This document shows positions 5,601 to 46,355 of a stretch of 64,000 nucleotides of DNA, in pieces. Origin of the DNA: Haliotis rubra (lineage: Eukaryota); assembly GCF_003918875.1 (NCBI RefSeq), contig NW_025767346.1:248001-312000 (forward strand), given 5' to 3'. Every line of letters begins with the position of its first letter. Positions within the stretch are counted from its first letter, which is position 1. The notes under the pieces are model-generated. The model did no database searches. It was not told the DNA's origin and saw only the letters and a list, made by a program, of their open reading frames with translations. A program made the translations under genes and the position numbers.

Positions 5601-5761
5601 GGTACACGGTTGGTCGAGTCTCTGTTTGGACAACTGTTTTGTGTCTGAATTTGTCACTCACATACGAAGCGTTGGTTAGGTAGTCTCTAGCTTGCTTTGT
5701 TGATACGAATTCGCCATCCACATCTGAACTCCATGAATCAGTCGGACAAACCGCAACGAAG

Positions 5762-5864
5762 ACTGGGAATCCCACTTGGATCTACATTGAAGGTGACCCC
5801 TGACCCAGGCCCCGGAACGAGCATGTTTATACAGCGCAGTGACCTAATATGCTTTCTAGGAAAC
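5762..5864. promoter_or_regulatory. Gene A upstream module: kB site GGGAATCCC, TGACCCCTGACCC, TGACCTAA, GAS site TTCTAGGAA
   Basis: Motifs at 5765, 5794, 5840 and 5854. Same order and near-identical spacing upstream of gene B. Confidence 0.6.
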
Positions 5865-10389: not shown

Positions 10390-12377
10390 CAATAGTAGTA
10401 GTAGTGGTAGTAGCAGTAGCAGTTGTATTATTAGTAGTGGGAGTAGTTGTAATAGTAGCAGTAGTAGTAGTTGTAATAGTAGTAGTAATAGTAGTAGGTT
10501 GAGTAATCGAAGTAGTGGCGGTAGTCGTAGAAAAAAGGAGTAGTCGAAGTATTAGTAGGAGTAGTAGTACAAGAGGAAGAAGTAGTCGAAGTAGAAGTAG
10601 TACAAGAGGAAGAAGTAGTCGAAGTACAAGAGGAAGAAGTAGTCGAAGTAGTAGTAGTACAAGAGGAAGAAGTAGTAGTAGGAGTAGTAGTACAAGAGGA
10701 AGAAGAAGTCGAAGTAGTAGTAGTAGTACAAGAGGAAGAAGTAGTCGAAGTAGTAGTAGTACAAGAGGAAGAAGTAGTCGAAGTAGTAGTAGTACAAGAA
10801 GAAGAAGTAGTCAAAGTAGTAGTAGTGCAAGAGGAAGAAGTAGTCGAAGTAGTAGTAGTAGTAGTTGTAACAGTAGTAGTAACTGCTGCAGGTTGAGTAA
10901 TCGAAGTAGTGGTGGTAGTCGTAGAAAAAAAGAAGTAGTCGAAGTAGTAGTAGGAGTAGCAGTACAAGAGGAAGAAGTAGTCGAAGTAGTAGTAGTAGTA
11001 GTAGTAGTTGTAACAGTAGTAGTAACTGCTGCAGGTTGAGTAATCGAAGTAGTGGTGGTAGTCGTAGAAAAAAAGAAGTAGTCGAAGTAGTAGTAGGAGT
11101 AGCAGTACAAGAGGAAGAAGTAGTCGAAGTAGTAGTAGTAGTACAAGAGGAAGAAGTAGTAAAAGTAGTAGTAGGAGTAGTAGTGCAAGAGGAAGAAGTA
11201 GTCGAAGTACAAGAGGAAGAAGTAGTCGAAGTAGTACAAGAGGAAGAAGTAGTCGAAGTAGTAGGAAGAGGAAGAAGTGAAGTGAGTGAGTAGCACAAGA
11301 GGAAAAAAGTATTCGAAGTAGTAGTAGTACAAGAGGGAAAAAGTGAAGTGGAGAAGTAAAGTAGTAGTACAAGAGGAAGAAGTAGTCAAAGTAGTACAAA
11401 GTAAGAGAGTAGTAGTACACAAGGAGGAAGAAGTAGTCGAAAGTACAGGAGGAAGAAGTATCGAGTAGAAGTGAGTACAAGAGGAAGAAGTAGTCGAAGT
11501 ACAAGAAGAAGAAGTATTCAGTAGTAGTAGTACAAGAAGTAGTCGAAGAGTAGGAAGTACAAAGAGGAAGAAGTAGATCGAAGTACAAAGAGGAAGAAGT
11601 ATTCAAGTAGTAGTAGTACAAGAAGAAAAGTATTGAAAGTAGTGAGTACCGAGGAAAGTAGAAGGAAGAAGGAAGAAGTAGTGAGTAGGATGTAGTGAGT
11701 ACAAGAGGAAGAAGTAGTCAAAGAAGTAGTGAGATGGTGAGTGAGTACTAAAGAGGGAGAGAAGTAGTCGAAGTACAAGAGGAAGAAGTATTCCAAGTAG
11801 AAGTAGTACAAAGTGAGTAGTAAATAGAGTAGTCCACAAGAGGAAGAAAGTCGAAGTAGTAGTAGTACAAGAGGAAGAAGTAGTCAGAAGTATTAGTAGT
11901 AGTACAAAGAGGAAGAAGTGAAAGTAAAAGTAGTGAGTAGTATGTAGTAATTACAAGAGGAAGAAGTAGTCGAAAGTACAAGAGGAAGAAGTAGTCGAGT
12001 AGTAAGTACAAGAGGAAGAAGTAGTCAAGTGAGTAGTAGTAGTACAAGAGAGGAAGAAGTAGTCGAGAAGTACAAAAGAGGAAGAAGTAGTGATCGAAGT
12101 AGTAGTAGTAATTACAAGAGGAAGAAGAAGTCAAAAGAAGTAGTAGTACAAAGGAGGAAGAAGTATTCGAAGTAAAAGAGGGAGTAGAAGTAAAAGTAGT
12201 AGTAGGAAGTAGTACAAGAGAGGAAAAGTAGGTCAGAAGTACAAAGAGGAAAAGAGAGTAGTCGAAGTAGTAGTGAGTACAAAGAGGAAGAGTAGTCAAG
12301 TAGTTGTGAGTACAAAGAAGGAAGAAGTAGTCAAAGTAGTAGTAGTACAAAGAGGAAGAAGTAGTCAAAGTAAGTAG

Positions 12378-12408
<31 letters not shown>

Positions 12409-13780
12409 TAGTAACAGTAGTAGTAGCTTCTGCAGAGAAGTAAGAAGTAGTTGTAACAGTAGTAGTCGAATTGAACAAAAGAGAAAATAGTACAAGAAGT
12501 AGTAGGAGAGTAGTACAAAAAGAAGAAGAAGTAGTCGAAGTAGTAGCACAGAGGAAGAGAAGTGTACAAGATCAAAGTAGTCAAAGTAGTACAAGAAGGA
12601 AGAAGTAGTCAAAGTAGTAGTAGTACAAAGAGGAAGAAGTAGTCAAAGTAAGTAGTAAGTACAAAAGGAACAAGTAGTGAAAGAAGTAGTAGAAGAAGTA
12701 CAAAAGAGGAAGAAAAGTAGTCGAAGTAAGAGTAGTGCAAGTACAAAGAGGGAACAAGTAGGAGTAGTAGTACAAAGAGGGAAGAAGAAGTGAGAAGTGT
12801 AGTGAGTACAAGAGGAAGAAGTAGTCAAAGTGAGTACAAGAAGTGAGGTCAAGTAGTAGAAGTAAGTACAAAGAGGAAAAGTAGTCAGTAGTAGTAGTAC
12901 AAGTTATGTCACAGTAGTAGTAAAGGTTGGGAAGAAGTGTGAGTCAAAAAAGTAGAAGTAGAAGTAGGAGTAGTAGTACAAGAGGAAGAAGTAGTCAGAG
13001 TAGTAAAGTAGTAAGATGGTAGTAGTACAAGAGGGAAGAAGTAGTCGAAGTGGTAGTAGTACAAAGAGGAAGAAGAAGAAGTAGTCGAAGTAGAGGAAGT
13101 GAGTACAAGTAGGAGTGAGTAGTCAAAGAAGAAGTGTCGAAGTAGTACAGGAGGAAGAGTAGTCGAAGTAGTAGTAGTAGTAGTAGGAAGAAGTAGTTTA
13201 AACAGTAGTAGTAACTGCTGCAGGTTGAAGTAATCGAAGTAGTGGTGGTAGTAGTAGACAAGAAAAGAAGTAGTCGAAGTAGTAGTAGGAGTAGCAAGTA
13301 CAAGAGGAAGAAGAAGTAGTCGAAAGTAGTAGTAGTAGTAGTAGTTGTTAACAGTAGTAGTAACTGCTGCAGGTTGAGTAATCGAAGTAGTGGTGGTAGT
13401 CGTAGAAAAAAAGAAGTAGTCGAAGTAGTAGTAGGAGTAGTAGTACAAGAGGAAGAAGTAGTCGAAGTAGTAGTAGTAGCACAAGAGGTAAGAGTAGTAA
13501 GTGTAGTAAAGTTGAGTAGGGAATAGAATTAGTCAAGTAGAAAGAAGAAAAGAAGTAGTCGAAGTAGAAGTAGGAGTAGTAGTACAAGAGGAAGAAGTAG
13601 TCGAAGTAGTAGTAGTACAAGAGGAAGAATTAGTCGAAGTAGAAGTAGAACAAGAGGAAGAAGTAGTCGAAGTAGTAGTAGTACAAGAGGAACAAGTAGT
13701 CGAAGTAGTAGTAGTACAAGAGGAAGAAGTAGTCAAAGTAGTAGTAGGAGTAGTAGTACAAGAGGAAGAAGTAGTCATGT
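10390..13780. repeat. Compound (GTA)n / GTACAAGAGGAAGAAGTAGTCGAA satellite filling a gene B intron; middle part is indel-rich
   Basis: Read directly; it produces all the Y/T/L-rich pseudo-ORFs here. Confidence 0.9.
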
Positions 13781-13955: not shown

Positions 13956-15027
13956 CTAAAAGACAAAAACATATGCAGACATGTGGCATAAATCATTAAA
14001 GAGCAGCCATTCAAAATTAAATCACTTGCTGCCCCGTTCTGAAATACGACATAATGTGTTGAAGCCTTCCACCAACCCGAGTGGATATTCAGAAAAGGAA
14101 ATGGACGTTTACGCGTTACGGTATACCTATTTGTTTGTTGTTTGACTCGTTCAAATATTCATTGAAGACCTATCTTTTCAGGACATATTACGAGTGACTT
14201 GTACAACTGCTGCAGTTGTTAGCTGTACACACGGCGCCCCATGAGCATACACTTTTAATAGTGTGTGGATACGGCGCCATACAAATGGACATGATTATGG
14301 CTTACGCTGCACTCAGCAGTATTCCAGCTACATGGTGGCGTCCTATAAATAATCGAGGCTGGACCAGACAATCTAGTGATTGACATCGATGTGTATACAT
14401 GTAACTGAACCGTAATCTAATCAAACAGCAAAGAACACCGATTAGCACAGACTACATTCTTGCATCGAATTACGTTGAAACCCATGAAGTAATTTCTTGG
14501 TCGTGTTTCATTGACTTGCTACCACTCGGTCTTTACTTAACAACTGCTTATCAATATATCCTGAGTTGGATATACATGATTTGTGTGTTTGTTGTTTTAC
14601 GCCGCACTCAGCAATATTCCAGATATATGGCGGCGGTCTGTAAATAATTTAGTCTGGACTAGACAACCCAGTGATCAACAGCATGAGCATCGATCTCCGC
14701 TATTGGGATACGACATGTGTCAACCAAGTCAGCATGCCTGAACACCCAACCCCGTTAGTCGCCTCTTAAGACAATCATGAGTTGCTGAAGATCAGTTCTA
14801 ACCCGGATCTTCACGGGTGAGACAATCATGGGTTCCTGCAGATCAGTTCTAACCCGGATCTTCACGGGTGGAAATACACAATGCCTTTCAGAAAGAGGTT
14901 AAATGTAACGTATGTCAAACTGATCATTACACTTTCTGAATAATGACCTGGTCTGGTATTTATTGGGGGCGAGTTCCATGTGGGTTTCGAACCCACACTG
15001 CCAGCGTGTCTGTCTGAGCGTACTCAC

Positions 15028-16705
15028 CGTGATATGCTGATTTGCCTTTCAGCTGACTCAGCTCAGCCTTGGTCATGGCGCCGTCTAGTTCCTCCCCGTC
15101 TAGTTTCCTGTCAGTGTTGTCATGCTTTCCCGCAAATTCTGCCACTTTCTTGTTTGTGGCGTTGCGGTGCTTTTGAAACTCTACATATGTCCAATTCGCC
15201 CAAACAATGTGAGCTTTTATAAGATCTCCATTTGTGCTGGTGTTCCGTTGGACTTGTTCCACTTCTTGATGGACAACGTCTATGTCTTGTTTGAGGGTCG
15301 GTATTTCCTTAAGCACAAGCTCATTTCTCCAAGACGCTAATGACTCAACACTTTGTTTTGTTACGTTCAATTGTGAAGAAAGATGTTCAGCCGTTATATT
15401 TATTGCGGTAATGTTTGATGTGATATTTCCCACTGATTGTGTCACTGCTTCAAGCTTCTCGGAGTTACTAAAGACCTGCGTCCGAACAGACTCAGTTAAA
15501 TGTTGAAGGCTATTTACATTTTCCTGAAGATTTGCGACGTCAAAACCCAAAACCTTAGATACGTTCTTCAACGTTTCCACTTCTCTCTTCACAGAATCAT
15601 TTTCGTCCATAAATTCTTTCTCCCTTTTATGGATTTCGTTTATGTGCTTATGGAACTCAACATATTTGTCTTTTGCCAATAGAATATGACCTTGAAGTAA
15701 TCGTGAACTCTCACTTGCATTTTGTCTCGCCTCCTCCAGCAATTTACGATTATCTGTTATGTTCTGTTTAATCATGGGCAATTCCTTCTCAGAGATCTCA
15801 GTTCTCCAAGACAGTAACAAAGCCGTGCTTTCTTTCATAGCCTGATCCATGGTTGACATTGTACTATTGATGCCAGCCATTTTTGTGGTGATGCTTTCCA
15901 CTTCCAGTGAAAGTTCCTGTACATTCCTTGCATTTTCTGCCGCAGCCTTCTCAGCATCTTCGGCCATCTTCCGTGTGGCATCTCCCGTATCTGCAATCTG
16001 CCTTTCCCGTGCGTCTAAGTCAGCAAGCCTTGCGGACACGGCTGTAACATTATGGGCGAGCTCTGAGACAGTGGTATTAACAGAGGTGACATTGATGGAA
16101 ATATTTCCTACATCCTGCACCAGTGCATCAACCTTCTCCAACCAGCCTTCGACGCCACGTGTCGCATCTTTTGCATCTTGTCGGATTTTCGGCAGTTCCA
16201 AATTCACAATGTCAGTTTTCCAAACATCAATATTTTCAACACGATTAGTCAAGGACTCCATCTGATCAGAGAGTTTTGAGACCGTTGAGTCCAGTCTGTT
16301 TACACTGTTTGTAAGTTTCTCCAATTTTTTGGGGTGATCTTCAGTTATATCCTTGTGATTCTGTGTATTATGACCAGGTTGGGATACAGCCTCCTCCCCA
16401 TCCTCTTCTAACTCGTGAACTCTCTTTTCCAACCTGGCAACTCTTTCTTCCATAACTTTCGACTGCTTAGCGAGTTCCTCAATTGTATAACCCTTACGTT
16501 TCAGGCGAGTGCGACATGTTTCCGTGCTTCCAAGTGTCTTGTCGTTCCTCTCCGACTTTTCAAACGTTTGTTTCAAACATTGTTTCTCTGGGCCATGTTT
16601 GTAGAAAGGGTATGGAGAAGCGTCTGGAATACCCCAAGAAAGCACGCTGATCAGGAAGAGAATTGTGATGAAGAGCATCAATGTAGTCCTGTCTCTAATT
16701 GCCAT
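15028..16705 (-). CDS. 2-TM coiled-coil gene B, large exon (signal/TM1 + about 535-aa glycosylated coiled coil). Model: 16705-15028, 13955-13816, 9741-9420, 9033-8786 = 795 aa
   Basis: Acceptor at 16711-16710; ATG at 16705 (MAIRDRTTLMLFITILFLISVLSWG); about 16 N-x-S/T sequons; donor CACG|GTGAGT. All phases are compatible (2388 nt). An upstream exon is unresolved. Confidence 0.85.
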
Positions 16706-17419
16706 TACGCTGAAATGACAAGTGAAAGATAACATCATTGGACATCACATTGTAGCTATGATATGCTGGAGGGAGGGAGTATGGTTTTACGCCGCTTTTA
16801 GTAATATTCCAGCAATATCACGGCGGAGGACACCAGAAATGGGTTTCGCACATTGTACCCATGTGGGGAATCGAACTCGGGCATTCGGCGTGACGAGCGA
16901 ACACTTTAAACACTAGGCTACACCCCACCCACCCCCACCCCACCCAGTCCCAATGATATGCTGGAACTCATGTAGGCATTTATATTGTAAAATGTATTTA
17001 TCTTCACAAATATTGCATACCCGCATATTTCTATTTGCTTTAATCAAAGTAAATCTACAAAAAAAATATAATAGGTAAGTTTTTATAGCTATAAATCACC
17101 ATCAGAAAGATTACATATGAGACCGTTTTGTGTCATAAAAGCTGATATTTAATGTCGGTTAGCCTACATCTGTTGTTGTTCTACCCAGAATGGGAACAGC
17201 GAAACACAATGGTTCTCATAGAACGCTATATATAATTTTGAAAGTAACAAATAAACCCGTTTAAATTGAAAGGGAATCCCAGTGAAATGGGAAATCCTGA
17301 ACCTGATGGAATTTAGGCTTGCTTCATTTACTGCTTTAGCATTGCAGGGAGGGCTGGGCAGTAAGGACAATAATGTGGTTCAGCAGAGACCAGTCTAATC
17401 TATGGTCTCTCAGTTCAAT

Positions 17420-17662
17420 ACCCGTGAAGGTCCGGGTTAGAATATTGATCTTCAGTAACCCATGCTTGTCGTAAGAGGCGACTAACGGGATCGGGTGGTC
17501 AGGCTCGCTGACTTGGTTGACACATGTCATCGGTTCCCAATTGCGGAGATTGATGGTCATGTTGTTGATCATTGGATTGTCTGGTCCAGGCTAAATTATT
17601 TACATACCACCGCCATATATCTGGAATATTGCTGTGTGCGGCGTAAAACTAAACTCACTCAC
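17420..17662 (+). mobile_element. Non-tRNA short retroposon family 2 (ACCCGTGAAGRTCCGGGTTAGAA...GCTGGAATATTGCT..GCGGCGTAAAAC)
   Basis: Many full or partial copies: about 4510, 14590-14870, 19060-19270, 33485-33690, 36795-37030, 40270-40495, 42490-42710, 50500-50750, 52245-52470, 56225-56440, 58065-58205 and 60743-61135. Confidence 0.85.
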
Positions 17663-17919
17663 TTCTCAGTTCAGGGACTGTGAGATAGACTATGGTTGTC
17701 ACCATGGCCTTCTCGAGTTATTTCCCTTGAATGATCAAGGCATCTAGCTTAAGTTTCTCTGTGGCCCGACATGCTTGTGTCTCTACCGTGTAAACTATAA
17801 GTATCGTATCACACATTGTGTACCTTGTGAGCCGCTATGGCGCCAGTAACTTATCAGCGTCGATTCTTCCAATAGACTTTGTCTTTTGTGCCACGTATCA
17901 TTCCAACAAAATGAAACAC

Positions 17920-18023
17920 ACTGGGAATCCCACAGGGAACTACATACTATATGACCTCTGACCCTGGCCCTGAAGCGAGCATCATGTAATCGTAATTTGA
18001 CCTAAATTCGAGTTCCAGGAAAC
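17920..18023. promoter_or_regulatory. Gene B / GTPase-1 intergenic module: kB site GGGAATCCC, TGACCTCTGACCC, TGACCTAA, GAS site TTCCAGGAA
   Basis: Motifs at 17923, 17952, 17998 and 18013. The kB-to-TGACC spacings of 29 and 75 nt are identical to gene A. Extra kB-like sites at 17272-17280 and 17289-17297. Confidence 0.6.
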
Positions 18024-18522
18024 GGGAACCATATGCAACTGACTAAATGCAACGTGTACATGCTATTTGATGACAGAATGTGCGAGACAGATTGAGGAGG
18101 TAGGTTGTTGTTGTAAATGTGTGAACATCTATAAATAACCTAATCTATAAAAGATTTATTGATAGCGGTGATCATGCTCAAGAGGGCGTGGTCTGTCGTT
18201 CTTCCTTTTTTATCAAGTGGGTAGGTAGGTATAGGCAGGTATGTGGGTAGGTAGGTACAGGTAGGTATAGGCCAGTGAGTGAATGAGTTTTACGCTGCTT
18301 TTAGCACTATTTCAGCGATATCACAGTGGGGGACACCAGAAATGGGCTTTGCACATTGTACCCATGTGGGGAATCGAACCCAGGTCATCGGCGTGACGAG
18401 CAAACACTTTAACAACTAGGCTACCCCACAGCCTAGCCTTTGAGGATTCAGCCATTAACAATATCAATTACTTATTTAAACTACCAATCATAAAAGTACA
18501 TCTATTTACAAAAATATATTAA

Positions 18523-18755
18523 TTAAAATTTGTCAATCAATTCTACCTCTTTTAAATATTCAATCTTAAAATGGTAATTAAGATTATGAAAAAGATCCTT
18601 CAATGGTTTGACATTAAAATATTTACCAGTTGTGATGGAAAAATCAACACAGTCAAGTAGGACATGCTTGACCGTGATTCTTTCATCACAAGGGATGCAA
18701 AACGGAGGATCCTGACCTTTCAATAATTATTCTGAGTGTAAGTGTGTATATCGCG
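18523..18755 (-). mobile_element. 3' fragment of an I/Nimb-clade LINE ORF2 (C-terminal CCHC knuckle)
   Basis: KGQDPPFCIPCDERITVKHVLLDCVDF...KYFNVKPLKDLF. Confidence 0.65.
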
Positions 18756-19269
18756 TAGGGAACTGCTGCAGGAGTGAGTGAGTGAGTTTGGTTATACGCC
18801 GCTTTTAGCAATATTCCAGCAATATCACGGCGGGGGACACCAGAAATGGGCATAACACATTGTACCCATGTTGGGAATCGAACCTGGGTCTTCGGCGTGA
18901 CGAGCGAACGCCTTAACCACTAGGCTACCCCACCTCCCCAACTTCTGCAGGAATGAGTAATGGTTGAATAGACACAATTAAATTCAACGTACGTACGTAT
19001 AGACGTATCTTGCTCAATCATTACATTGTCGTACTATATGTTACAGATATGTTTGTTTTTGTTTGTTGTTTAACGCCGCACTCAACAATATTCCAGTTAT
19101 ATGGCTGCGGTCTGTAAATAATCAAGTCTGGACCAGACAATCCAGTGATCAACAGCATGAGCATCGATCTAGGAAATTGGTATGCGATGACATGTGTCAT
19201 TCAAGTCATTGAACCGGACCACCGTATCCCGTCAGTCGCCTCTTACGACAAGCATGGATTGCTGAAGAT

Positions 19270-19783
19270 GTATAAATAACTCCTTGTAGAAATCTATATT
19301 GAAAATCTAAAAGTTTTGTGTCTTGCAATCCTTTTCTGTATGCTGTAAATATATTTTTCCAATCAAAGTCTATTTCAGGAAATAGCAGCTGCCATTTATT
19401 ACACATATTTGGGTGTATATCATTGGAAATAAGTTTATCATAAAAAGTCCTTCATCCTGAAGTGATGTTTTTACTAGATATATCTGGCATTGGTTAATAT
19501 TTAAATCCCTGGCTGGTATAAAAAGACAGTGGTTAAGAGCATTTATCCAAGAGTCAGGTAAGACATGTAGTTAATATTTATAATCTAAAAAAGTGCTTTT
19601 GATACCATATATTTCTTTTAAAGATTCTATTGACAATAATCCAGTTTCATCACAAATATCCCAAATATTTATAATTCCTTTATCTGCCCAGTTATTTATG
19701 AAGTTTAATGAATTTTTTAAATTATGATTAAACCATAATGGTTGGGATTTGTGCACAGTTTCCTGGGCTACCTGGTACCACAA
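19270..19783 (-). mobile_element. Degraded L1/Tx1-type LINE ORF2 C-terminal fragment
   Basis: QPLWFNHNL...WADKGIINIWDI and W..IF....LQDTKLLDFQYRFLQ motifs, broken by stops. Confidence 0.65.
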
Positions 19784-19846
19784 CTACACCAGTCAGCCCT
19801 GCAAACCACACATTGCCTGACTTAAAGAGAGAAAACACCAGAAGTC

Positions 19847-20079
19847 ATGGACCATCAAAAGCGACGGCTTCAGGCGCAGATAAAGGACAATTTACAGAAG
19901 ATTGGACGGCGACTAAATGGACGACCTATGACTGTGGCTTTTATTGGAACCATTGGAGTTGGCAAGTCTTCCCTAATCAACACCATCGCGACGGCCATGG
20001 GCACCGGATTTTGGCAGCAACACGCTTACACTGGAGGCCACGGGGGTCAGGCTGACCCGGTCACGGCAGTCATCAGAAG
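19847..20079 (+). CDS. IFI44-like: IFI44-like GTPase 1, exon 1 (G1, G2). Model: 19847-20079, 20832-21166, 30148-30506 = 308 aa
   Basis: VAFIGTIGVGKSSLINTI Walker A; AG|GTACGG donor, phase 2. All three exons join in frame (927 nt). Confidence 0.85.
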
Positions 20080-20400: not shown

Positions 20401-20831
20401 AACTCGTCTTTTAATCATCATCGCCACAACCATCATCTTAATCATATAAACCACAATTCTCCGCCACCATCATCATCAAGTCTGTAATGATCAACGCCAT
20501 CACAGTCATCACCATCAGCATCCGCAAAGTATGAGAGACTTTGTTCAGGAAGTGTATTATAATCACCAAACTCTCCAAAACATAATATGGTAACTTGTGT
20601 TGTATTTGTACAATCTCAAAGCTGCAAGTTAATTGCATCAGGTATAACATAATCATAGTTTATATCTGTTTCCCAATGAAAGCCGTTTAGTTACTCATAC
20701 GCTAAATCTCATGACGTAAAGACTAAGAGGATGTACATGTAATTTGAGTGTAAAAATAGCTAACCAGTTTTTATTGCAGTTTCCATTCATTATCATGCTT
20801 CTGTCGTGTTGTACCCTGTGTATGTCCGTAG

Positions 20832-21166
20832 ATATCCACAATGTTGCCGACCGGAAGAGCATCGTAACCAGCTCTTCCCAACTCTAATGGACGTCCAGGG
20901 ACTTCCGGATCATCCTGACGCCATCTGGCGGGAGGCTCTGTCCCTTTTGTTCTATGGGCATATTCCCGAGGAAGCAAACCTGCACGACGTGGTAGACTAC
21001 CTACAGGCCAGGGATGACATACGGCGTCCGAGGTACATTCGAGGTCGCGACCGCCTGAAGGTGGACCGGGTTGTCGTTGTTGCCTCTGCCCAGGAACATT
21101 TACCCAAGGGTCTGCTTGAATCTGTTGTTAAGATTGCCAGGCCTGTTAGCGGACGCAGTCGAAGAG
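20832..21166 (+). CDS. IFI44-like: IFI44-like GTPase 1, exon 2 (G3)
   Basis: gtAG acceptor. YPQCC...PTLMDVQGL...LLFYGHIPE...LKVDRVVVVASA. G|GTTAGT donor. Confidence 0.85.
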
Positions 21167-21199
21167 GTTAGTGGCATGTTTTCCTGTGGATGAAGAAAT

Positions 21200-24100
21200 G
21201 ACATTATATGTAGCAGGAATGACATTGGATGTAGTATGAATGACACTGGATGTAGTATGAATGACACTGGATGTAGTATGAATGACACCGGATGTAGCAG
21301 GAATGACACTGGATGTAGTATGAATGACACCGGATGTAGTATGAATGACACTGTATGTAGTATGAATGGCACTGGATGTAGTATGAATGACACTGGATGT
21401 AGCAGGAATGACACCGGATGTAGTATGAATGACACTGGATGTAGTATGAATGACACTGGATGTAGTATGAATGACACTGGATGTAGTATGAATCACACTG
21501 GATGTAGCATGAATGACACTGGATGTAGTATGAATGACACCGGGTGTAGTATGAATGACACTGGATGTAGTATGAATGACACCGGGTGTAGTATGAATCA
21601 CACTGGATGTAGCAGGAATGACACTGGATGTAGTATGAATCGCACTGGGTGTAGTATGAATGACACTGGATGTAGTAGGAATGACACTGGATGTAGTATG
21701 AATCACACTGGATGTAACATGAATGACACCGGGTGGAGTATGAATGACACTGGATGTAGTATGAATGACACTGGATGTAGTATGAATCACACTGGATGTA
21801 ACATGAATGACACCGGTGTAGTATGAATGACACTGGATGTAGTATGAATGACACTGGATGTAGTATGAATCACACCGGGTGTAGTATGAATCACACTGGA
21901 TGTAGCAGGAATGACACTGGATGTAGTATGAATCACACTGGATGTAACATGAATGACACTGGGTGTAGCATGAATGACACTGGATGTAGTATGAATCACA
22001 CCGGGTGTAGTATGAATCACACTGGATGTAGCAGGAATGACACTGGATGTAGTATGAATCACACTGGATGTAGTATGAATCACACTGGATGTAGTATGAA
22101 TCACACCGGGTGTAGTATGAATCACACTGGATGTAGTAGGAATGACACTGGATGTAGGATGAATCACACTGGCTGTAGCAGGAATGACACTGGGTGTAGC
22201 ATGAATGACACTGGATGTAGTATGAATCACACCGGGTGTAGTATGAATCACACTGGATGTAGCAGGAATGACACTGGATGTAGTATGAATCACACTGGAT
22301 GTAACATGAATGACACTGGATGTAGTATGAATCACACCGGGTGTAGTATGAATCACACTGGATGTAGCAGGAATGACACTGGATGTAACATGAATCACAC
22401 TGGATGTAGCAGGAATGACACTGGATGTAGTATGAATCACACTGGATGTAACATGAATGACACTGGATGTAGTATGAATCACACCGGGTGTAGTATGAAT
22501 GACACTGGATGTAGCAGGAATGACACTGGATGTAGTATGAATCACACTGGATGTAGCATGAATGACACTGGATGTAGTATGAATGACACCGGGTGGAGTA
22601 TGAATGACACTGGATGTAGTATGAATCACACCGGGTGTAGTATGAATCACACTGGATGTAGCAGGAATGACACTGGACGTAGTATGAATGACACTGGGTG
22701 TAGTATGAATGACACTGGACGTAGTATGAATGACACTGGGTGTAGTATGAATGACCCTGGATGTAGTATGAATGACACTGGATGTAGTATGAATGACACC
22801 GGGTGTAGTATGAATCACACAGGATGTAGCAGGAATGACACTGGATGTAGTATGAATCACACTGGATGTAGCAGGAATGACACTGGGTGTAGTATGAATG
22901 ACACTGGATGTAGTATGAATCACACCGGGTGTAGTATGAATCACACTGGATGTAGTATGAATGACACTGGACGTAGTATGAATGACACTGGGTGTAGTAT
23001 GAATCACACCGGGTGTAGTATGAATCACACTGGATGTAGCAGGAATGACACTGGACGTAGTATGAATGACACTGGGTGTAGTATGAATGACACTGGACGT
23101 AGTATGAATGACACTGGATGTAGTATGAATGACACTGGATGTAGTATGAATCACACTGGATGTAGCATGAATGACACTGGATGTAGTATGAATGACACCG
23201 GGTGTAGTATGAATGACACTGGATGTAGTATGAATGACACCGGGTGTAGTATGAATCACACTGGATGTAGCAGGAATGACACTGGATGTAGTATGAATCG
23301 CACTGGGTGTAGTATGAATGACACTGGATGTAGTAGGAATGACACTGGATGTAGTATGAATCACACTGGATGTAACATGAATGACACCGGGTGGAGTATG
23401 AATGACACTGGATGTAGTATGAATCACACTGGATGTAGTATGAATCACACTGGATGTAACATGAATGACACCGGGTGGAGTATGAATGACACTGGATGTA
23501 GTATGAATGACACTGGATGTAGTATGAATCACACCGGGTGTAGTATGAATCACACTGGATGTAGCAGGAATGACACTGGATGTAGTATGAATCACACTGG
23601 ATGTAACATGAATGACACTGGGTGTAGCATGAATGACACTGGATGTAGTATGAATCACACCGGGTGTAGTATGAATCACACTGGATGTAGCAGGAATGAC
23701 ACTGGATGTAGTATGAATCACACTGGATGTAGTATGAATCACACTGGATGTAGTATGAATCACACCGGGTGTAGTATGAATCACACTGGATGTAGTAGGA
23801 ATGACACTGGATGTAGGATGAATCACACTGGCTGTAGCAGGAATGACACTGGGTGTAGCATGAATGACACTGGATGTAGTATGAATCACACCGGGTGTAG
23901 TATGAATCACACTGGATGTAGCAGGAATGACACTGGATGTAGTATGAATCACACTAGATGTAACATGAATGACACTGGATGTAGTATGAATCACACCGGG
24001 TGTAGTATGAATCACACTGGATGTAGCAGGAATGACACTGGATGTAACATGAATCACACTGGATGTAGCAGGAATGACACTGGATGTAGTATGAATCACA

Positions 24101-27100
24101 CTGGATGTAACATGAATGACACTGGATGTAGTATGAATGACACCGGGTGTAGTATGAATGACACTGGATGTAGCAGGAATGACACTGGATGTAGTATGAA
24201 TCACACTGGATGTAGCATGAATGACACTGGATGTAGTATGAATGACACCGGGTGGAGTATGAATGACACTGGATGTAGTATGAATCACACCGGGTGTAGT
24301 ATGAATCACACTGGATGTAGCAGGAATGACACTGGACGTAGTATGAATGACACTGGGTGTAGTATGAATGACACTGGACGTAGTATGAATGACACTGGGT
24401 GTAGTATGAATGACCCTGGATGTAGTATGAATGACACTGGATGTAGTATGAATGACACCGGGTGTAGTATGAATCACACAGGATGTAGCAGGAATGACAC
24501 TGGATGTAGTATGAATCACACTGGATGTACCATGAATGACACTGGATGTAGTATGAATGACACCGGGTGTAGTATGAATGACACCGGGTGTAGTATGAAT
24601 CACACTGGATGTAGCAGGAATGACACTGGGTGTAGTATGAATGACACTGGATGTAGTATGAATCACACCGGGTGTAGTATGAATCACACTGGATGTAGTA
24701 TGAATGACACTGGACGTAGTATGAATGACACTGGGTGTAGTATGAATCACACCGGGTGTAGTATGAATCACACTGGATGTAGCAGGAATGACACTGGACG
24801 TAGTATGAATGACACTGGGTGTAGTATGAATGACACTGGACGTAGTATGAATGACACTGGGTGTAGTATGAATGACATTGGATGTAGCAGGAATGCCACT
24901 GGACGTAGTATGAATGACACTGGGTGTAGTATGAATGACACTGGATGTAGTATGAATGACACCGGGTGTAGCAGGAATGACACTGGACGTAGTATGAATG
25001 ACACTGGGTGTAGTATGAATGACACTGGACGTAGTATGAATGACACTGGGTGTAGTATGAATGACATTGGATGTAGCAGGAATGCCACTGGACGTAGTAT
25101 GAATGACACCGGGTGTAGTATGAATGACACTGGATGTAGAATGAATCACACCGGGTGTAGTATGAATGACACTGGATGTAGTATGAATCACACTGGATGT
25201 AGTATGAATCACACTGGATGTAGTATGAATCACACCGGGTGTAGTATGAATCACACTGGATGTAGCAGGAATGACACTGGACGTAGTATGAATGACACTG
25301 GGTGTAGTATGAATGACACTGGACGTAGTATGAATGACACTGGGTGTAGTATGAATCACACTGGATGTAGCAGGAATGACACTGGACGTAGTATGAATGA
25401 CACTGGATGTAGTATGAATGACACTGGACGTAGTATGAATGGCACTGCGTGTACTATGAATGAAACTGGATGTAGCAGGAATGACACTGGACGTAGTATG
25501 AATGACACTGGGTGTAGTATGAATGACACTGGACGTAGTATGAATGACACTGGGTGTAGTATGAATCACACTGGATGTAGCAGGAATGACACTGGACGTA
25601 GTATGAATGACACTGGATGTAGTATGAATGACACTGGACGTAGTATGAATGGCACTGGGTGTAGTATGAATGACACTGGATGTAGTATGAATGACACTGG
25701 ATGTAGTATGAATCACACCGGGTGTAGTATGAATCACACTGGTTGTAGCAGGTATGACACTAGATGTAGTATATGAATCACACTGGATATAGCATGAATG
25801 ACACTGGATGTAGTATGAATGACACTGGGTGTAGTATGAATGACACTGGACGTAGTATGAATGACACTGGATGTAGTATGAATGACACTGGACGTAGTAT
25901 GAATGACACTGGACGTAGTATGAATGGCACTGGGTGTAGTATGAATCACACCGGGTGTAGTATGAATCACACTGGTTGTAGCAGGTATGACACTGGATGT
26001 AGTATGAATCACACTGGATATAGCATGAATGACACTGGATGTAGTATGAATGACACTGGGTGTAGTATGAATGACACTGGACGTAGTATGAATGGCACTG
26101 GGTGTAGTATGAATGACACTGGATGTAGTATGAATGGCACTGGGTGTAGTATGAATGACACTGGATGTAGTATGAATGACACTGGATGTAGTATGAATCA
26201 CACCGGGTGTAGTATGAATCACACTGGTTGTAGCAGGTATGACACTGGATGTAGTATGAATCACACTGGATATAGCATGAATGACACTGGATGTAGTATG
26301 AATGACACTGGGTGTAGTATGAATGACACTGGACGTAGTATGAATGACACTGGACGTAGTATGAATGACACTGGATGTAGTATGAATGACACTGGACGTA
26401 GTATGAATGGCACTGGGTGTAGTATGAATGACACTGGATGTAGTATGAATGACACTGGATGTAGTATGAATCACACCGGGTGTAGTATGAATCACACTGG
26501 TTGTAGCAGGTATGACACTGGATGTAGTATGAATCACACTGGATATAGCATGAATGACACTGGATGTAGTATGAATGACACTGGGTGTAGTATGAATGAC
26601 ACTGGACGTAGTATGAATGGCACTGGGTGTAGTATGAATGGCACTGGGTGTAGTATGAATGACACTGGATGTAGTATTAATCACACCGGGTGTAGTATGA
26701 ATCACACTGGATGTAGCAGGAATGACACTGGACGTAGTATGAATGACACTGGGTGTAGTATGAATGACACTGGACGTAGTATGAATGACACTGGGTGTAC
26801 CATGAATGACACTGGATGTAGTATGAATGACACCGGGTGTAGTATGAATGACACTGGATGTAGTATGAATGACACTGGATGTAGTATGAATCACACCGGG
26901 TGTAGTATGAATCACACTGGATGTAGCAGGAATGACACTGGACGTAGTATGAATGACACTGGGTGTAGTATGAATGACACTGGACGTAGTATGAATGACA
27001 CTGGGTGTAGTATGAATCACACTGGATGTAGCAGGAATGACACTGGACGTAGTATGAATGACACTGGATGTAGTATGAATGACACTGGACGTAGTATGAA

Positions 27101-30075
27101 TGGCACTGGGTGTAGTATGAATGACACTGGATGTAGTATGAATGACACTGGATGTAGTATGAATCACACCGGGTGTAGTATGAATCACACTGGTTGTAGC
27201 AGGTATGACACTGGATGTAGTATGAATCACACTGGATATAGCATGAATGACACTGGATGTAGTATGAATGACACTGGGTGTAGTATGAATGACACTGGAC
27301 GTAGTATGAATGACACTGGATGTAGTATGAATGACACTGGACGTAGTATGAATGACACTGGACGTAGTATGAATGGCACTGGGTGTAGTATGAATGACAC
27401 TGGATGTAGTATGAATGACACTGGATGTAGTATGAATCACACCGGGTGTAGTATGAATCACACTGGTTGTAGCAGGTATGACACTGGATGTAGTATGAAT
27501 CACACTGGATATAGCATGAATGACACTGGATGTAGTATGAATGACACTGGGTGTAGTATGAATGACACTGGACGTAGTATGAATGGCACTGGGTGTAGTA
27601 TGAATGACACTGGACGTAGTATGAATGGCACTAGGTGTAGTATGAATGACACTGGATGTAGTATGAATGACACTGGACGTAGTATGAATGACACTGGACG
27701 TAGTATGAATGACACTGGATGTAGTATGAATGACACTGGACGTAGTATGAATGGCACTGGGTGTAGTATGAATGACACTGGATGTAGTATGAATCACACT
27801 GGATGTAGTATGAATCACACCGGGTGTAGTATGAATCACACTGGTTGTAGCAGGTATGACACTGGATGTAGTATGAATCACACTGGATATAGCATGAATG
27901 ACACTGGATGTAGTATGAATGACACTGGGTGTAGTATGAATGACACTGGACGTAGTATGAATGGCACTGGGTGTAGTATGAATGGCACTGGGTGTAGTAT
28001 GAATGACACTGGATGTAGTATTAATCACACCGGGTGTAGTATGAATCACACTGGATGTAGCAGGAATGACACTGGACGTTAGTATGAATGACACTGGGTG
28101 TAGTATGAATGACACTGGACGTAGTATGAATGACACTGGGTGTAGTATGAATGACCCTGGATGTAGTATGAATGACACTGGATGTAGTATGAATGACACT
28201 GGATGTAGTATGAATCACACCGGGTGTAGTATGAATCACACTGGTTGTAGCAGGTATGACACTGGATGTAGTATGAATCACACTGGATGTAGTATGAATG
28301 ACACCGGGTGTAGTATTAATCACACTAGATGTAGTATGAATCACACCGGGTGTAGTATGAATGACACTGAATGTAGCAGGAATGACTCTGGATGTAGTAT
28401 GAATGACACTTGGTGTAGTATGAATGACACTGGACGTAGTATGAATGACACCGGGTGTAGTATGAATCACACTGGATGTAGCAGGAATGACACTGGGTGT
28501 AGTATGAATGACACTGGATGTAGCAAGAATGACACTGGATTTAGTATGAATGACACTGGATGTAGCAAGAATGACACTGGATGTAGTATGAATGACACTG
28601 GACGTAGTATGAATGACACTGGATGTAGCAAGAATGACACTGGATGTAGTATGAATGACACTGGACGTAGTATGAATGACACTGGGTGTAGTATGAATGA
28701 CACTGGATGTAGTATGAATGACACTGGGTGTAGTATGAATGACACTGGATGTAGCAAGAATGACACTGGATGTAGTATGAATGACACTGGACGTAGTATG
28801 AATGACACTGGGTGTAGTATGAATGACACTGGATGTAGTATGAATGACACTGGGTGTAGTATGAATGACACTGGGTTTAGAATGAATGACACTGGACGTA
28901 GTATGAGATGTAGTATGAATGACACTGGATGTAGCAGGAATGACACTGGATGTAGCAGGAATGACACTGGGTGTAGTATGAATGACACTGGGTGTTGTAT
29001 GAATGACACTGGGTGTAGTATGAATGACACTAGGTGTATTTTGAATGACACTGAGTGTAGTATGAATGACATTGGGTGTAGTATGAATGACACTTGGTGT
29101 AGTATGAATGACACTGGGTGTAGTATGAATGACATTGGGTGTAGTATGAATGACACTGGGTGTAGTATGAATGACACTGGGTGTAGTATGAATGACACTA
29201 GGTGTATTTTGAATGACACTTGGTGTAGTATGAATGACACTGGGTGTAGTATAAATGACACTGGGTGTAGTATGAATGACACTGGGTGTAATATGAATGA
29301 CACTGTGTGTAGAATGAATGACACTAGGTGTATTTTGAATGACACTGGGTGTAGTATGAATGACACTGGGTGTAGTATGAATGACACTAGGTGTAGTATG
29401 AATGACACTGGGTGTAGTATGAATGACACTGGGTGTAGTATGAATGACACTGGGTGTAGTATGAATGACACTTGGTGTAGCAGGAATGACACTGGCAGTA
29501 GTATGAATGACACTGGATGTAGCAGGAATGACACTGGGTGTAGCATGAATCACACTGGGTGTAGTATGAATGACACTGGATGTAGCAGGAATGACACTGG
29601 ATGTAGTATGAATCACACTGGATATAGCATGAATCACACTGGATGTAGTATGAATCACACCGGGTGTAGTATGAATCACACTGGATGTAGCAGGAATGAC
29701 ACTGGGTGTAGTATGAATGACACTGGATGTAGTATGAATGACAGTTGGTGTAGTATGAATGACACTGGATGTAGCAAGAATGACACTGGATGTAGTATGA
29801 ATGACACTGGACGTAGTATGAATGACACTGGGTGTAGTATGAATGACACTGGATGTAGTATGAATGACACTGGGTGTAGTAGGAATGACACTGGGTGTAG
29901 AATGAATGACACTGGACGTAGTATGAGATGTAGTATGAATGAAACTGGATGTAGCAGGAATGAAACTGGATGTAGCAGGAATGACACTGGGTGCTGTATG
30001 AATGACGCTGGATGTACTAGGAAAAACACTGAATGTTGTATGAATGACACGATATTTAGCAGTAATGACACATCC
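21200..30075. repeat. About 8.9-kb array of a 21-bp unit (GTAGTATGAATGACACTGGAT)n occupying GTPase-1 intron 2
   Basis: More than 400 tandem units; source of the 700-1300-aa pseudo-ORFs. Confidence 0.95.
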
Positions 30076-30147
30076 AACCATAGTTGGTTCCAGCCCGCAA
30101 AGAAACACATTTAGTTTCAATGTAACAGGATACTTTTTCCCCAACAG

Positions 30148-43593: not shown

Positions 43594-44640
43594 CTGGATG
43601 ACATTTACACAGGTTTCACAGTGACACATGTGCCACGAAAATTCATTTGTAAGAAATGAAAATAGAAAGGGGTTGATATACAGCCTTGCCAAGCACCAAG
43701 TCCCATCTGTAATGTTTCAAATAATTCTCTCTTGATTCTTAACAACTGCCAATATGTTACTCCACATTTAAGCTATAATATACGTAAGACTTTTTGGAAT
43801 AACTTACTTCTCATTTAATGAATCAAAAACATGTAAAACCGACAAACAATTTCTAAACTAAATCTTTGCGTGAGTGAGTGGTGAGTTTAGTTTTACACCT
43901 CTTTTAGCAATATACCAGCAATATCATGGCGGGGGATACCAGAAATGGGCTTCACACATTGTACCCATGTGGGGAATCGAACCCGGGTCTTCAGCGTGAC
44001 GACCGAACGCTGTAACCACTGGGCTACCCCGCCGCCCCTCTTTGAATGGGAGAAGCCAGAAGAAGAAGTTAAGCAGCACATATATCGAAGAAAATGTGTT
44101 ATCTATCTGTCGTATCTGTCTCGTCAAAGAAATACAGTTTACGCACTGGACGAGACATTACGGGAATATGTGAGGAAACAAATTCTGTCTAAGGCCATGA
44201 TGTTTGTTAAGCAGAGTAACGTCCCTTGGACACCATGACCGTTGGTTCGAATCCTATACTCGCCCTGGTTATGATCACTGTCAGCACTGCAGGTTCACGT
44301 ACTTGGTTTACCAAGGCAATATGTGTCAACCCTACTGTCCTAAACATTTAGAGTGAGTGAATATGGTTTACTTTAGCCTTTAGCTATAATTCTGCAATAT
44401 CCAAGATAGCATTCGGACGTTGGCCCAACGTTGGCAATGTGGGCAAAACCATTGCCAACGTTGGGCCAACGTCTGAATGCTATCTGGGATCGCGGCGGGG
44501 GCACCAGAAATGGGCTTCACACATTGTACCCATAATGGGACTCCAACCCGGGTCTTCGGTGTGACGAGCGAACGCTTTACCAACTAGACTACCCCGCTGT
44601 AAAAGATGTAAAAAGGATTACAACGAGACTAGATACTTAC

Positions 44641-45335
44641 GTGGCTGTAGACATTGCACATATGAAAAATAAGGGATCCTGTAAAACACGTTGGAACTTT
44701 GGCTGGTGGTTAGCTTGTAGCGCGTCAGTTCCGGGGATATCAGCCGCAGGATCTCTCTTGGTCACTGTAGTCTCTCTGTCAGGCGGTGCCCAATCTGGCT
44801 TTGCGTGTGTTTGTGATCCCTTAGTGCCGGGGGTATCTGCTGAAGTTTCTCTGTTGGTCACTGTGGTCTCTCTGTCAAGCGTTGTCGAATCTTGCTCTGC
44901 CTGTATTTGTGATCCCTTGCCTCCGTGTGTATGTGCCACAGGATCGCCGTTGGTCACTGTGGTCTCTCTGTCAAGCGTTGTCGTATCTTGCTCTGCGTGT
45001 ATTTGTGATCCCTTGCCTCCGTGTGTCTGTGCCACAGGAGGCCGTGCCGGATCTGGCTTTGCGTGTGTTACTGACCCTTCAGTAATGGAAGGCTCTGCGC
45101 CAGAGGACGCGTTTGCTTCTGTCCTCTCCTCACAGATACACTTGCTCGTCGTTTTGTCTTCTCGTAACCCTGTCTCTTTCAAATCGGCCGTTGCGTTACC
45201 GCCCGATGTATATTTATGCCCGACAACGTTTGTCTCCCTTTCATTTCCAGCCAGACCTCCAGTTAGGGTTGATTCATGTCCCGAACTTACTTCGCCTGTC
45301 ATCAGTGACGAGTTGTCCTGGTCCCTAGACGCCAT
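44641..45335 (-). CDS. 2-TM gene C, exon 1 (repetitive T/E/D-rich cytoplasmic tail). Model: 45335-44641, 41910-41603, 41104-40929, 39609-39294, 38854-38649 = 566 aa
   Basis: ATG at 45335; AC|GTAAGT donor, phase 2. All five exons join in frame (1701 nt). Confidence 0.8.
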
Positions 45336-45686
45336 TCAAGCGTGGAATAGACGTGGTTGTAAGAGCTGGCGACAAGTCGTCATTCGGAGTGCACTTCATA
45401 TGCTGATAGTTGTTATTCACTCTGTTTAACATGAATATTGTTCCACCCAGGCAATGACCAATGTCCAACCACCTGCTTCTCGCCCTCTCCAAGTGACATG
45501 GACTGCTCACGGAACTATTTCGCCTTCTCCCTGAAGAAATATATACGTAATGCTTGATCGGGTCCACTTCAATACATCCCCGCTCAGTCGTTAGTTAGAT
45601 TTCCAGGGCGAGAGGACAATGTATTTGTGTCTCCACGTTCTGTTTACTCACTGCGCAATAACATAAACCAGTCTCAAAGGTCAACC

Positions 45687-45760
45687 TGACCTAAACATCG
45701 CTTCCAAGAAACAAACGACACGCCTGCTGTAGAGGCAGTCTGGGATCCTGGGGATTCCCC
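45687..45760. promoter_or_regulatory. Gene C / GTPase-2 intergenic module: TGACCTAA, GAS site TTCCAAGAA, kB site GGGGATTCCCC
   Basis: Motifs at 45687, 45702 and 45750. TGACCTAA-to-GAS spacing is 15 nt, as upstream of gene B. Confidence 0.55.
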
Positions 45761-46355
45761 GAAATCCGCCTCACATATCAATCCCAACGCGTAAATAAAT
45801 AGTCCTTAATGCATCGTATCTCTTTGTTGTTAACATGCGATTTTAACCAACAGCATACCGCTTGCATATAAAATGAGTGTCATACGTTACAATATCATGC
45901 TGACATGATGAACATATATTGTTGAATCCGTATCGATCGAACGAACTGTTGTCGGCAACCGTGGCGGAGGAATATGTTGTTAAAAATAACCACACGTAAA
46001 GTTGAGCTCGGCGTAAGGATAAGAGGGCCTCGCCACAACAACACGACATATTTGTCTCGGAGGGGCTGAGAAGGCTGGACTTGAGGTAGGTGTAAGCAGA
46101 TTTATGTATTGTACACATTCTACACATACTGACATGATTTCATAGGGCTGTAGCGTGTATTATAACATGCCAGTCTCAATTTCTTGGCCTGAATATGTTA
46201 ACAAGTCACAGCCAGGAATGCGATTGAGCATGACAGTCTTCAGACTGTGACAGGGTGACCCTTGATACAACAGTTTTGTGTTTCAGTCTGAGCGAGCAAG
46301 TATGGTTTTGCGCCGCTTTTAGCAATACTCCAGCAATATCACGGCCGGCGACACC

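What the first reader, a model, noticed from the sequence alone, without database searches (positions are those of the whole stretch)
17920..18023. Conserved kB + nuclear-receptor half-site + GAS promoter grammar upstream of all three 2-TM genes
Seen: ACTGGGAATCCCAC is identical at 5762 and 17920. TGACCYCTGACCC lies 29 nt and TGACCTAA 75 nt from the kB start in both A and B, although the bases between them have diverged. TGACCTAA-N6/7-TTCNNNGAAAC occurs in all three (5840/5854, 17998/18013, 45687/45702), and C has GGGGATTCCCC at 45750. Known: GGGRNYYCC binds Rel/NF-kB, TTCN3GAA binds STAT, and AT-rich TAGGTCA is an ROR/Rev-erb-type site. Inference: a paralogue footprint of an immune-inducible, possibly bidirectional promoter with an unusual fixed NR-STAT composite.
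Basis: partly seen in the sequence, partly recalled or inferred. Interest (0 to 1): 0.7.

Follow-up and report, generated by a model that had tools for sequence, protein, structure and literature searches.

The report
Abalone two-way immune-gene promoter, conserved motifs
The motifs sit in a real, roughly 105-base two-way promoter between an abalone membrane-protein gene and a neighbouring IFI44-like GTPase gene, kept across four abalone species, but which proteins bind it is still untested.

Summary
The window is Haliotis rubra.

**What it is.** The three 2-TM genes lie on the minus strand, and the modules sit just upstream of them. Module B (17891-18023) lies exactly between two divergent transcript ends seen in assembled contigs that appear to be RNA. 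One is exon 1 of gene B (17916 down to 17824). The other is a non-coding exon 1 of the head-to-head P-loop GTPase gene (18023-18099). Module C lies inside a 638-nt gap between the two start codons of a similar gene pair. Module A has no partner gene.

**Conservation.** The A/B island is 56-66% identical between paralogues where the flanks are unalignable, in all four Haliotis species examined. A-type and B-type form separate clades, so the duplication is old.

**Which motifs hold.**
- The kB-like 9-mer is kept in 11 of 11 copies.
- An unnamed invariant block is kept in 8 of 8 A/B copies.

Binding factors and immune inducibility remain untested. This is a new member of a known kind.

The parts
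17891..18023 (.). Module B: conserved island between the two divergent first exons
   Evidence: It is 74% identical to 5731-5824 in an otherwise unalignable flank. It is a conservation peak in the 8-sequence alignment.
17920..17933 (.). kB-like site of B (core GGGAATCCC at 17923-17931)
   Evidence: The 9-mer GGRWTTYCC is kept in 8 of 8 A/B copies through consensus-preserving changes.
17952..17964 (-). DR1 of RGGTCA half-sites (GGGTCAgAGGTCA on the minus strand)
   Evidence: GGTCAnnGGTCA is invariant in 8 of 8 A/B copies. The only two DR1 matches in the window background are the A and B modules.
17966..17982 (.). Unnamed invariant block (minus strand ATGCTCGnTnCnGGGC)
   Evidence: It holds the longest run of invariant columns in the 8-sequence alignment.
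17998..18023 (.). Half-site plus GAS-like composite of B (TGACCTAA at 17998, TTCCAGGAA at 18013)
   Evidence: The GAS-like site is kept in 4 of 4 B-types and the half-site in 3 of 4.
17824..17916 (-). Non-coding exon 1 of 2-TM gene B (its 5' end is at or beyond 17916)
   Evidence: An X3 contig piece covers 17824-17916 and breaks at the donor CAAG|GTAC. X1 and X2 contigs break at the acceptor TTTCAG| at 16710/16709. The donor is conserved in H. asinina.
16703..16709 (-). Start of exon 2 of gene B, with the ATG at 16705-16703
   Evidence: The annotated CDS start of P0001 maps to 16705. The acceptor is seen.
18023..18099 (+). Non-coding exon 1 of the head-to-head P-loop GTPase gene (its 5' end is at or before 18023)
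   Evidence: A 1228-nt X3 contig starts at 18023 and jumps from about 18100 to 19747. An X4 contig breaks at 19757, next to the CACAG| acceptor. The donor GAG|GTAGGT is conserved in all four B-types.
19847..20053 (+). First coding exon of the GTPase partner of B (P-loop GTIGVGKSS)
   Evidence: The annotated CDS start maps here. Pfam gives weak RsgA_GTPase, MMR_HSR1 and IIGP hits.
5731..5864 (.). Module A: kB-like 5762-5775, DR1 5794-5806, invariant block 5808-5824, half-site 5840-5847, GAS-like 5854-5864
   Evidence: The ATG of gene A's first coding exon is at 5600. No partner gene lies upstream.
45678..45712 (.). Module C, part 1: IR3 palindrome AGGTCAaccTGACCT (45678-45692) and GAS-like TTCCAAGAA (45702-45710)
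   Evidence: 30 of 34 columns are invariant in three species against a 57% background.
45750..45760 (.). Module C, part 2: palindromic kB site GGGGATTCCCC
   Evidence: It is a full match to GGGRNWYYCC on both strands. 11 of 11 columns are invariant in three species.
45974..46012 (+). Probable first coding exon of the plus-strand partner gene of C (ATG 45974, donor GGC|GTAAGG)
   Evidence: It aligns to the annotated CDS start of the divergent gene in H. asinina (L004:9344). It is near-invariant in three species.
44637..45335 (-). First coding exon of 2-TM gene C (ATG at 45335)
   Evidence: ORF. P0010 and P0012 are the annotated products.

Best explanation
The module is the core and proximal part of a compact RNA polymerase II promoter. 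An ancestral abalone gene pair shared it head-to-head: a two-anchor coiled-coil membrane protein on one strand and a P-loop GTPase on the other. Earlier notes call the GTPase IFI44-like.

**Shown here**
- In copy B, the two first exons point away from each other and their observed ends are at most 107 bp apart, with all motifs between them.
- In copy C, the two start codons are 638 nt apart with the motifs in the middle.
- Copy A kept the promoter but has no partner gene.
- Selection has held short blocks in place since before the four Haliotis species split.

**Inferred, not shown**
- The blocks are binding sites. The kB-like 9-mer would bind a Rel/NF-kB protein.
- The paired RGGTCA site (DR1 in A/B, IR3 in C) would bind a nuclear-receptor dimer.
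- The TTCN3GAA palindrome would bind STAT.
- Together these would drive both genes of a pair.
For: **Genome and gene layout.** The genome is H. rubra, and the gene identities and strands come.

**Transcript evidence at B.**
- Contig ends lie at 17916 and 18023.
- Five contigs break at canonical splice sites: 17824/17823, 16710/16709, about 18100, and 19758 or 19747.
- Both donors are conserved in orthologues.

**Conservation.**
- A-versus-B identity is 56-66% in the core and 20-41% in the flanks, in each of four species.
- Within-type identity is 74-96% and between-type identity is 55-68%. This rules out recent gene conversion.
- The kB-like 9-mer is kept in 11 of 11 copies and the paired RGGTCA site in 11 of 11.
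- In C, the kB site is invariant at 11 of 11 columns and the composite at 30 of 34, against a 57% background.
- Indels in the island are 5 and 7 nt long, so it is not coding.

**Other checks.** No Rfam family matches the modules.

**Published context.**
- Oyster IFI44 is induced by poly(I:C) through an interferon-like protein, and the oyster receptor activates GAS and STAT3 reporters (PMC8218723).
- A bivalve Rel binds a kB-like probe in EMSA (PMC4497715).
Against: - The runs are only guessed to be RNA and are kept as contigs. A contig end is not a transcription start, so the true starts may lie inside the module and some motifs may be transcribed.
- One junction (the X3 contig at 19747) is not canonical on the reference allele.
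- No transcript evidence was obtained for A or C.
- In A/B the kB-like site matches GGGRNWYYCC at only 9 of 10 positions.
- The GAS-like site is lost in 3 of 11 copies and the adjacent half-site in 3 of 11.
- The order of kB and composite differs between A/B and C.
- Two bivalve relatives show none of the motifs within 1 kb of their annotated CDS starts.
- Inducibility and binding were not tested.
Confidence: 0.68

Rival explanations
1. The half-site plus GAS-like composite is not a nuclear-receptor and STAT pair. It is instead the core promoter of the plus-strand GTPase gene: an A/T-rich TATA-like element (CCTAAAT / CTAATAT) at a fixed distance from a start-proximal element. The fixed spacing would then come from core-promoter geometry. 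The rest of the module would still be a promoter.
For: - In B the GTPase contig begins at 18023, the last base of the composite. The A/T-rich part lies 16-25 nt upstream of that.
- The composite decays mainly where no GTPase partner exists. In A-types the GAS-like site is lost in 2 of 4 copies and the half-site in 2 of 4. In B-types the GAS-like site is kept in 4 of 4.
Against: - The A/T-rich element is a poor TATA match and sits a few bases too close to the observed contig end.
- In C the half-site is half of a perfect, conserved IR3 palindrome, which points to a dimeric DNA-binding protein.
- TTCCAGGAA is a perfect STAT-type palindrome.
- H. asinina B has lost the half-site although it has a partner gene.
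Confidence: 0.25
2. The island is conserved because it is transcribed. On this view it forms overlapping 5' leaders of the two divergent mRNAs and is kept for RNA-level reasons, not as DNA binding sites.
For: - Contig ends understate transcript ends, so both transcripts may run into the module.
- Conservation continues about 35 nt into exon 1 of gene B, to about 17885.
Against: - In the one run with visible pieces, nothing covers 17917-18022 (tables 2 and 8).
- The conserved blocks are short palindromes or direct repeats typical of dimeric DNA-binding proteins.
- The kB-like site varies only at degenerate consensus positions.
- No RNA family or structure signal was found.
Confidence: 0.1
3. 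The similarity is leftover homology or gene conversion between tandem duplicates, or a shared repeat element, with no function.
For: - A and B are tandem duplicates with a 93% identical 1300-nt coding block, so conversion does occur in this locus.
- The region is full of SINE-like repeats.
Against: - Flanks on both sides are saturated while the island persists in all four species.
- A-type and B-type islands form separate clades across species, so there has been no recent conversion.
- The island matches nothing else in the window.
- It sits at syntenic positions in three other genomes.
Confidence: 0.04

Closest known systems
Bidirectional promoters of vertebrate interferon-stimulated genes, for example human BST2 (tetherin) with the lncRNA BISPR
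   Same: Both have two divergent transcripts from one short shared region next to an antiviral membrane-protein gene. BST2/BISPR is described as a bidirectional promoter pair in PMC5665557.
   Different: Here both partners are protein-coding: a 2-TM coiled-coil protein and a P-loop GTPase. The host is a mollusc. No ISRE was recognised. Co-induction has not been shown.
Composite kB plus GAS promoters of vertebrate immune genes such as IRF1 (from my own knowledge, not checked here)
   Same: A Rel-type palindrome and a TTCN3GAA palindrome lie within about 100 bp of a transcription start.
   Different: The abalone module adds an invariant paired RGGTCA nuclear-receptor-type site and an unnamed invariant block. 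The relative order of the sites differs between paralogues. The binding proteins are unknown.
Oyster IFI44 (CgIFNIP-44) as an interferon-like-protein-dependent, poly(I:C)-induced gene (PMC8218723, PMC7460283)
   Same: The partner gene here is a P-loop GTPase that earlier notes of this scan call IFI44-like. A GAS-like site beside it fits a JAK-STAT-driven gene.
   Different: IFI44 membership of the abalone GTPase was not retested here; only weak P-loop Pfam hits were found. No promoter of a mollusc IFI44 gene was found described in the papers searched.
Pinctada fucata Nacrein promoter bound by Pf-Rel (PMC4497715)
   Same: A mollusc Rel protein binds a kB-like site (GGAGATCCCC in the EMSA probe) and activates a promoter. 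This shows that the vertebrate-type consensus is usable in molluscs.
   Different: It is a different gene, tissue and site sequence. Binding to the abalone sites is only inferred.

Membership tests
Bidirectional (head-to-head) RNA polymerase II promoter | Two genes on opposite strands pointing away from each other | tested here: met
   B pairs with a GTPase gene (ATGs at 16705 on minus and 19847 on plus). C pairs with a plus-strand gene (ATGs at 45335 and 45974). A has no partner.
Bidirectional (head-to-head) RNA polymerase II promoter | Transcription starts less than 1 kb apart | tested here: met
   For B, the contig 5' ends are at 17916 and 18023, so the gap is at most 107 bp. Caveat: these are contigs of runs only guessed to be RNA. 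For C, the only bound is the 638 nt between ATGs.
Bidirectional (head-to-head) RNA polymerase II promoter | Activity in both orientations and co-regulation of the pair | not testable with these tools
   This needs reporter assays and expression series.
kB site (Rel/NF-kB, GGGRNWYYCC) | Match to the 10-mer consensus | tested here: inconclusive
   C matches fully on both strands (GGGGAATCCC). A and B match at 9 of 10 positions (GGGAATCCCA).
kB site (Rel/NF-kB, GGGRNWYYCC) | Kept under selection in orthologues and paralogues | tested here: met
   GGRWTTYCC is present in 11 of 11 copies, with four sequence variants that all keep the consensus.
kB site (Rel/NF-kB, GGGRNWYYCC) | Bound by a Rel-homology protein and needed for induction | not testable with these tools
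   The only support is an analogy with Pf-Rel EMSA in a bivalve (PMC4497715).
GAS element (STAT, TTCN3GAA) | Match to TTCN3GAA | tested here: met
   The sites are TTCTAGGAA (A), TTCCAGGAA (B) and TTCCAAGAA (C). The background rate is about 0.5 per kb, so a match alone is weak evidence.
GAS element (STAT, TTCN3GAA) | Kept in orthologues | tested here: inconclusive
   It is kept in 8 of 11 copies. It is lost in A of H. cracherodii and H. rufescens and in C of H. asinina.
Nuclear-receptor response element (paired RGGTCA half-sites: DR1 or IR3) | Two RGGTCA half-sites at a canonical spacing | tested here: met
   DR1 is GGGTCAgRGGTCA in A/B. IR3 is AGGTCAnnnTGACCT in C. The window holds no other such sites.
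Nuclear-receptor response element (paired RGGTCA half-sites: DR1 or IR3) | Kept in orthologues | tested here: met
   GGTCAnnGGTCA is present in 8 of 8 A/B copies and IR3 in 3 of 3 C copies. H. cracherodii B has a third half-site.
Monomeric ROR/Rev-erb-type site (WAWNTRGGTCA) | A/T-rich 5' extension plus RGGTCA, conserved | tested here: not met
   Only B of three species fits fully. A and C of H. rubra miss one position. AGGTCA is lost in 3 of 8 A/B copies.
Interspersed repeat or transposon fragment | Many dispersed copies, not tied to one gene position | tested here: not met
   The window holds one copy per gene and no other match. The copies in three other genomes are syntenic.

The most novel reading that the evidence does not exclude
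The 2-TM coiled-coil protein and the IFI44-like GTPase form an ancient co-regulated two-gene antiviral cassette in abalone. A single roughly 105-bp two-way promoter drives it and integrates Rel, STAT and a nuclear-receptor dimer. That would give hormonal or metabolic input into innate immunity, and the cassette would have been copied as a unit.
Probability: 0.2. Interest if true: 0.6.

Novelty: new member of a known kind. Interest (0 to 1): 0.4.

Why it matters
Very few mollusc promoters have been dissected, and I found none for the IFI44-type genes that respond to herpesviruses of farmed oysters.

This is a short module of about 130 bp, footprinted by both paralogues and orthologues, with mapped first exons on both sides. 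It is a ready-made test piece for asking three questions:
- Do Rel, STAT and nuclear receptors drive antiviral genes in abalone?
- Are the membrane protein and the GTPase co-regulated?
- Can the module serve as an inducible promoter for mollusc cell work?

In itself it is an ordinary kind of element.

Tried and rejected
- **Repeat element:** rejected. The island matches nothing else in the window and is syntenic in other species.
- **Known RNA family:** none at the modules.
- **CpG island:** no. GC is about 0.44 with no peak.
- **Small coding exon:** rejected because indels are 5 and 7 nt.
- **Recent gene conversion:** rejected by the type-specific clades.
- **Deep conservation outside Haliotis:** two Potamilus relatives show no kB, GAS, DR1 or IR3 within 1 kb of their CDS starts. 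This is a weak negative because their first exons are uncertain.
- **Transcript evidence for A and C:** not obtained.
- **Isoform look-ups:** P0006, P0007 and P0010 were not on record. Longer isoforms found through one search were used instead.
- **Exon joining:** I used only single-exon references and database proteins.
- **Masked N runs:** L001 is the same genome record as the window. I used it for coordinates only and did not read the letters under the window's N runs.

Full report
**Observation**

The 14-mer with the kB-like core occurs only at 5762 and 17920. TGACCYCTGACCC occurs only at 5794 and 17952. The composite TGACCTAA-N6/7-TTCN3GAAAC occurs only at 5840, 17998 and 45687. GGGGATTCCCC is at 45750.

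The distances of 29 and 75 nt are right when counted from the GGGAATCCC core. About 6e-5 chance occurrences of the composite are expected in 64 kb. The three copies therefore share descent.

**Context**

The window is Haliotis rubra contig QXJH01000064.1. The three 2-TM genes lie on the minus strand:
- A, annotated as two models of 310 and 903 aa, with its ATG at 5600.
- B, P0001 of 795 aa, with its ATG at 16705.
- C, P0010/P0012, with its ATG at 45335.

B is head-to-head with a plus-strand P-loop GTPase gene whose ATG is at 19847. C faces a plus-strand gene whose probable ATG is at 45974, which leaves 638 nt between the two start codons. A has only the 3' end of B upstream.

Earlier notes of this scan call the GTPases IFI44-like. 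I could confirm only weak P-loop GTPase hits.

**Transcripts at B**

Four runs were laid on 14900-20050. They are kept as contigs and only guessed to be RNA. Coverage follows exons and repeats rather than the whole stretch.
- A 1228-nt contig of X3 begins at 18023, the last base of the GAS-like motif. It runs to about 18100, where the genome reads GAG|GTAGGT, and resumes at 19747.
- An X4 contig breaks at 19757, beside CACAG|.
- A second X3 contig covers 17824-17916 and then leaves the genome exactly at CAAG|GTAC.
- Contigs of X1 and X2 that cover the start of the B coding exon break at 16711 and 16709, at TTTCAG|.

From this I read two first exons:
- Gene B has a non-coding exon 1 from at least 17916 down to 17824, followed by a 1114-nt intron.
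- The GTPase gene has a non-coding exon 1 from at most 18023 to 18099.

The module (17920-18023) fills the gap of at most 107 bp between them. Both donors are conserved in orthologues.

Three caveats apply. Contig ends are not transcription starts. The X3 junction at 19747 is not canonical on the reference allele, and that individual differs by about 5%. The unmatched contig tails could not be read.

**Conservation**

Orthologous loci were fetched from H. asinina, H. cracherodii and H. rufescens. Each A-type and B-type gene has the island at the same place, 100-280 nt before the ATG where exon 1 is coding.

Measurements from the 8-sequence alignment:
- A-versus-B identity within a species is 56-66% in the core and 20-41% in the flanks, in all four species.
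- Within-type identity is 74-96% and between-type identity is 55-68%.

The duplication therefore predates the species split, and the island has not been recently converted. This holds even though a 1300-nt coding block of A and B is 93% identical in H. rubra.

For C, three species align throughout. The background invariance is 57%. The kB site is invariant at 11 of 11 columns and the IR3-GAS stretch at 30 of 34.

**Which blocks hold**

| Block | Kept in |
|---|---|
| kB-like 9-mer GGRWTTYCC | 11 of 11 copies, in four variants that all keep the consensus |
| Paired RGGTCA site | 11 of 11: DR1 in all eight A/B copies, perfect or near-perfect IR3 palindrome in all three C copies (45678-45692 in the window) |
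| Unnamed block ATGCTCGnTnCnGGGC | invariant in 8 of 8 A/B copies |
| GAS-like site | 8 of 11 |
| Half-site next to the GAS-like site | 8 of 11 |

In H. asinina one half of the composite is lost in each of the three paralogues. The kB site lies on the 2-TM gene side of the composite in A/B and on the partner-gene side in C.

The common content is therefore a Rel-type palindrome, a dimeric RGGTCA site and, usually, a STAT-type palindrome. It is not one fixed order.

**Mechanism**

Shown:
- Position at two divergent first exons.
- Purifying selection on short blocks.
- No coding potential (5- and 7-nt indels), no known RNA family and no repeat origin.

Inferred:
- The blocks bind Rel, a nuclear-receptor dimer and STAT.
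- The pair of genes is co-regulated.
- The promoter is immune-inducible.

Published work makes this plausible. Oyster IFI44 rises after poly(I:C) and depends on an interferon-like protein whose receptor activates GAS and STAT3 reporters (PMC8218723). IFI44 rises in herpesvirus infection (PMC7460283). A bivalve Rel binds a kB-like probe (PMC4497715).

One live alternative concerns the composite alone. It may be the GTPase core promoter, since it abuts that transcript's start and decays mostly in the partnerless A copies.

**Limits**
- There is no transcript evidence for A or C.
- Two bivalve relatives lack the motifs near their annotated starts, which is a weak negative.

**Verdict**

This is a real, conserved, compact two-way promoter, a new member of a known kind, with untested factor assignments.

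Noticed in passing
window 21067-30144: There is a roughly 9-kb tandem array of a 21-nt unit, with more than 400 copies about 90% alike. It lies between the GTPase exon at 20806-21171 and its last exon at 30168-30506. Frames stay open for up to 1316 codons on both strands, for example a repeated TSSVIHT heptad.
   Followed up: no
window 2370-3669 versus 15022-16321: The coiled-coil exons of genes A and B are 93% identical over 1300 nt, while their promoters are only about 66% identical and their introns are unalignable. This suggests gene conversion or homogenisation confined to the coding block.
   Followed up: partly
window 3609-3761: Gene A is annotated as two separate models: 310 aa ending at 3761 and 903 aa starting at 3609. 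The orthologues are single genes. This could be a frame break, a pseudogene or an assembly error.
   Followed up: no
window 18773-18939, 49176-49339, 43882-44038 and at least 20 more: A SINE-like repeat of about 160 nt is scattered in both orientations at 80-92% identity. Summed contig depth over these copies reaches 10,000-150,000 in the laid runs.
   Followed up: no
window 17136-17307 (GGGAATCCC at 17272): A second kB-like core sits in intron 1 of gene B. The bin has contig cover in all four runs. A joint from 17270 to 17669, with non-canonical ends, is seen in all four. I have no explanation for this.
   Followed up: no
L003:9795-9815 (H. cracherodii B-type): A 7-nt duplication gives three RGGTCA half-sites in a row (DR1-DR1) where the other species have two.
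   Followed up: no
L006, aligned to window 45974: In H. cracherodii the conserved start-codon exon of the plus-strand partner of gene C reads ATG followed directly by TAG. Its annotation uses a start 4 kb away.
   Followed up: no
window 5865-5950: Next to module A, the sequence homologous to the GTPase exon 1 of B ends in GAGGAG followed by TA instead of GT. It looks like a relic first exon whose donor is lost, which fits A having no partner gene.
   Followed up: partly
window 30673-30707 (minus): There is a borderline partial match to U3 snoRNA: 34.8 bits against a gathering score of 34, covering model positions 4-38 only.
   Followed up: no
window 10431-13620: A long low-complexity stretch lies inside an intron of gene B. 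It has open frames rich in Ser/Thr or Tyr/Phe/Leu on both strands.
   Followed up: no
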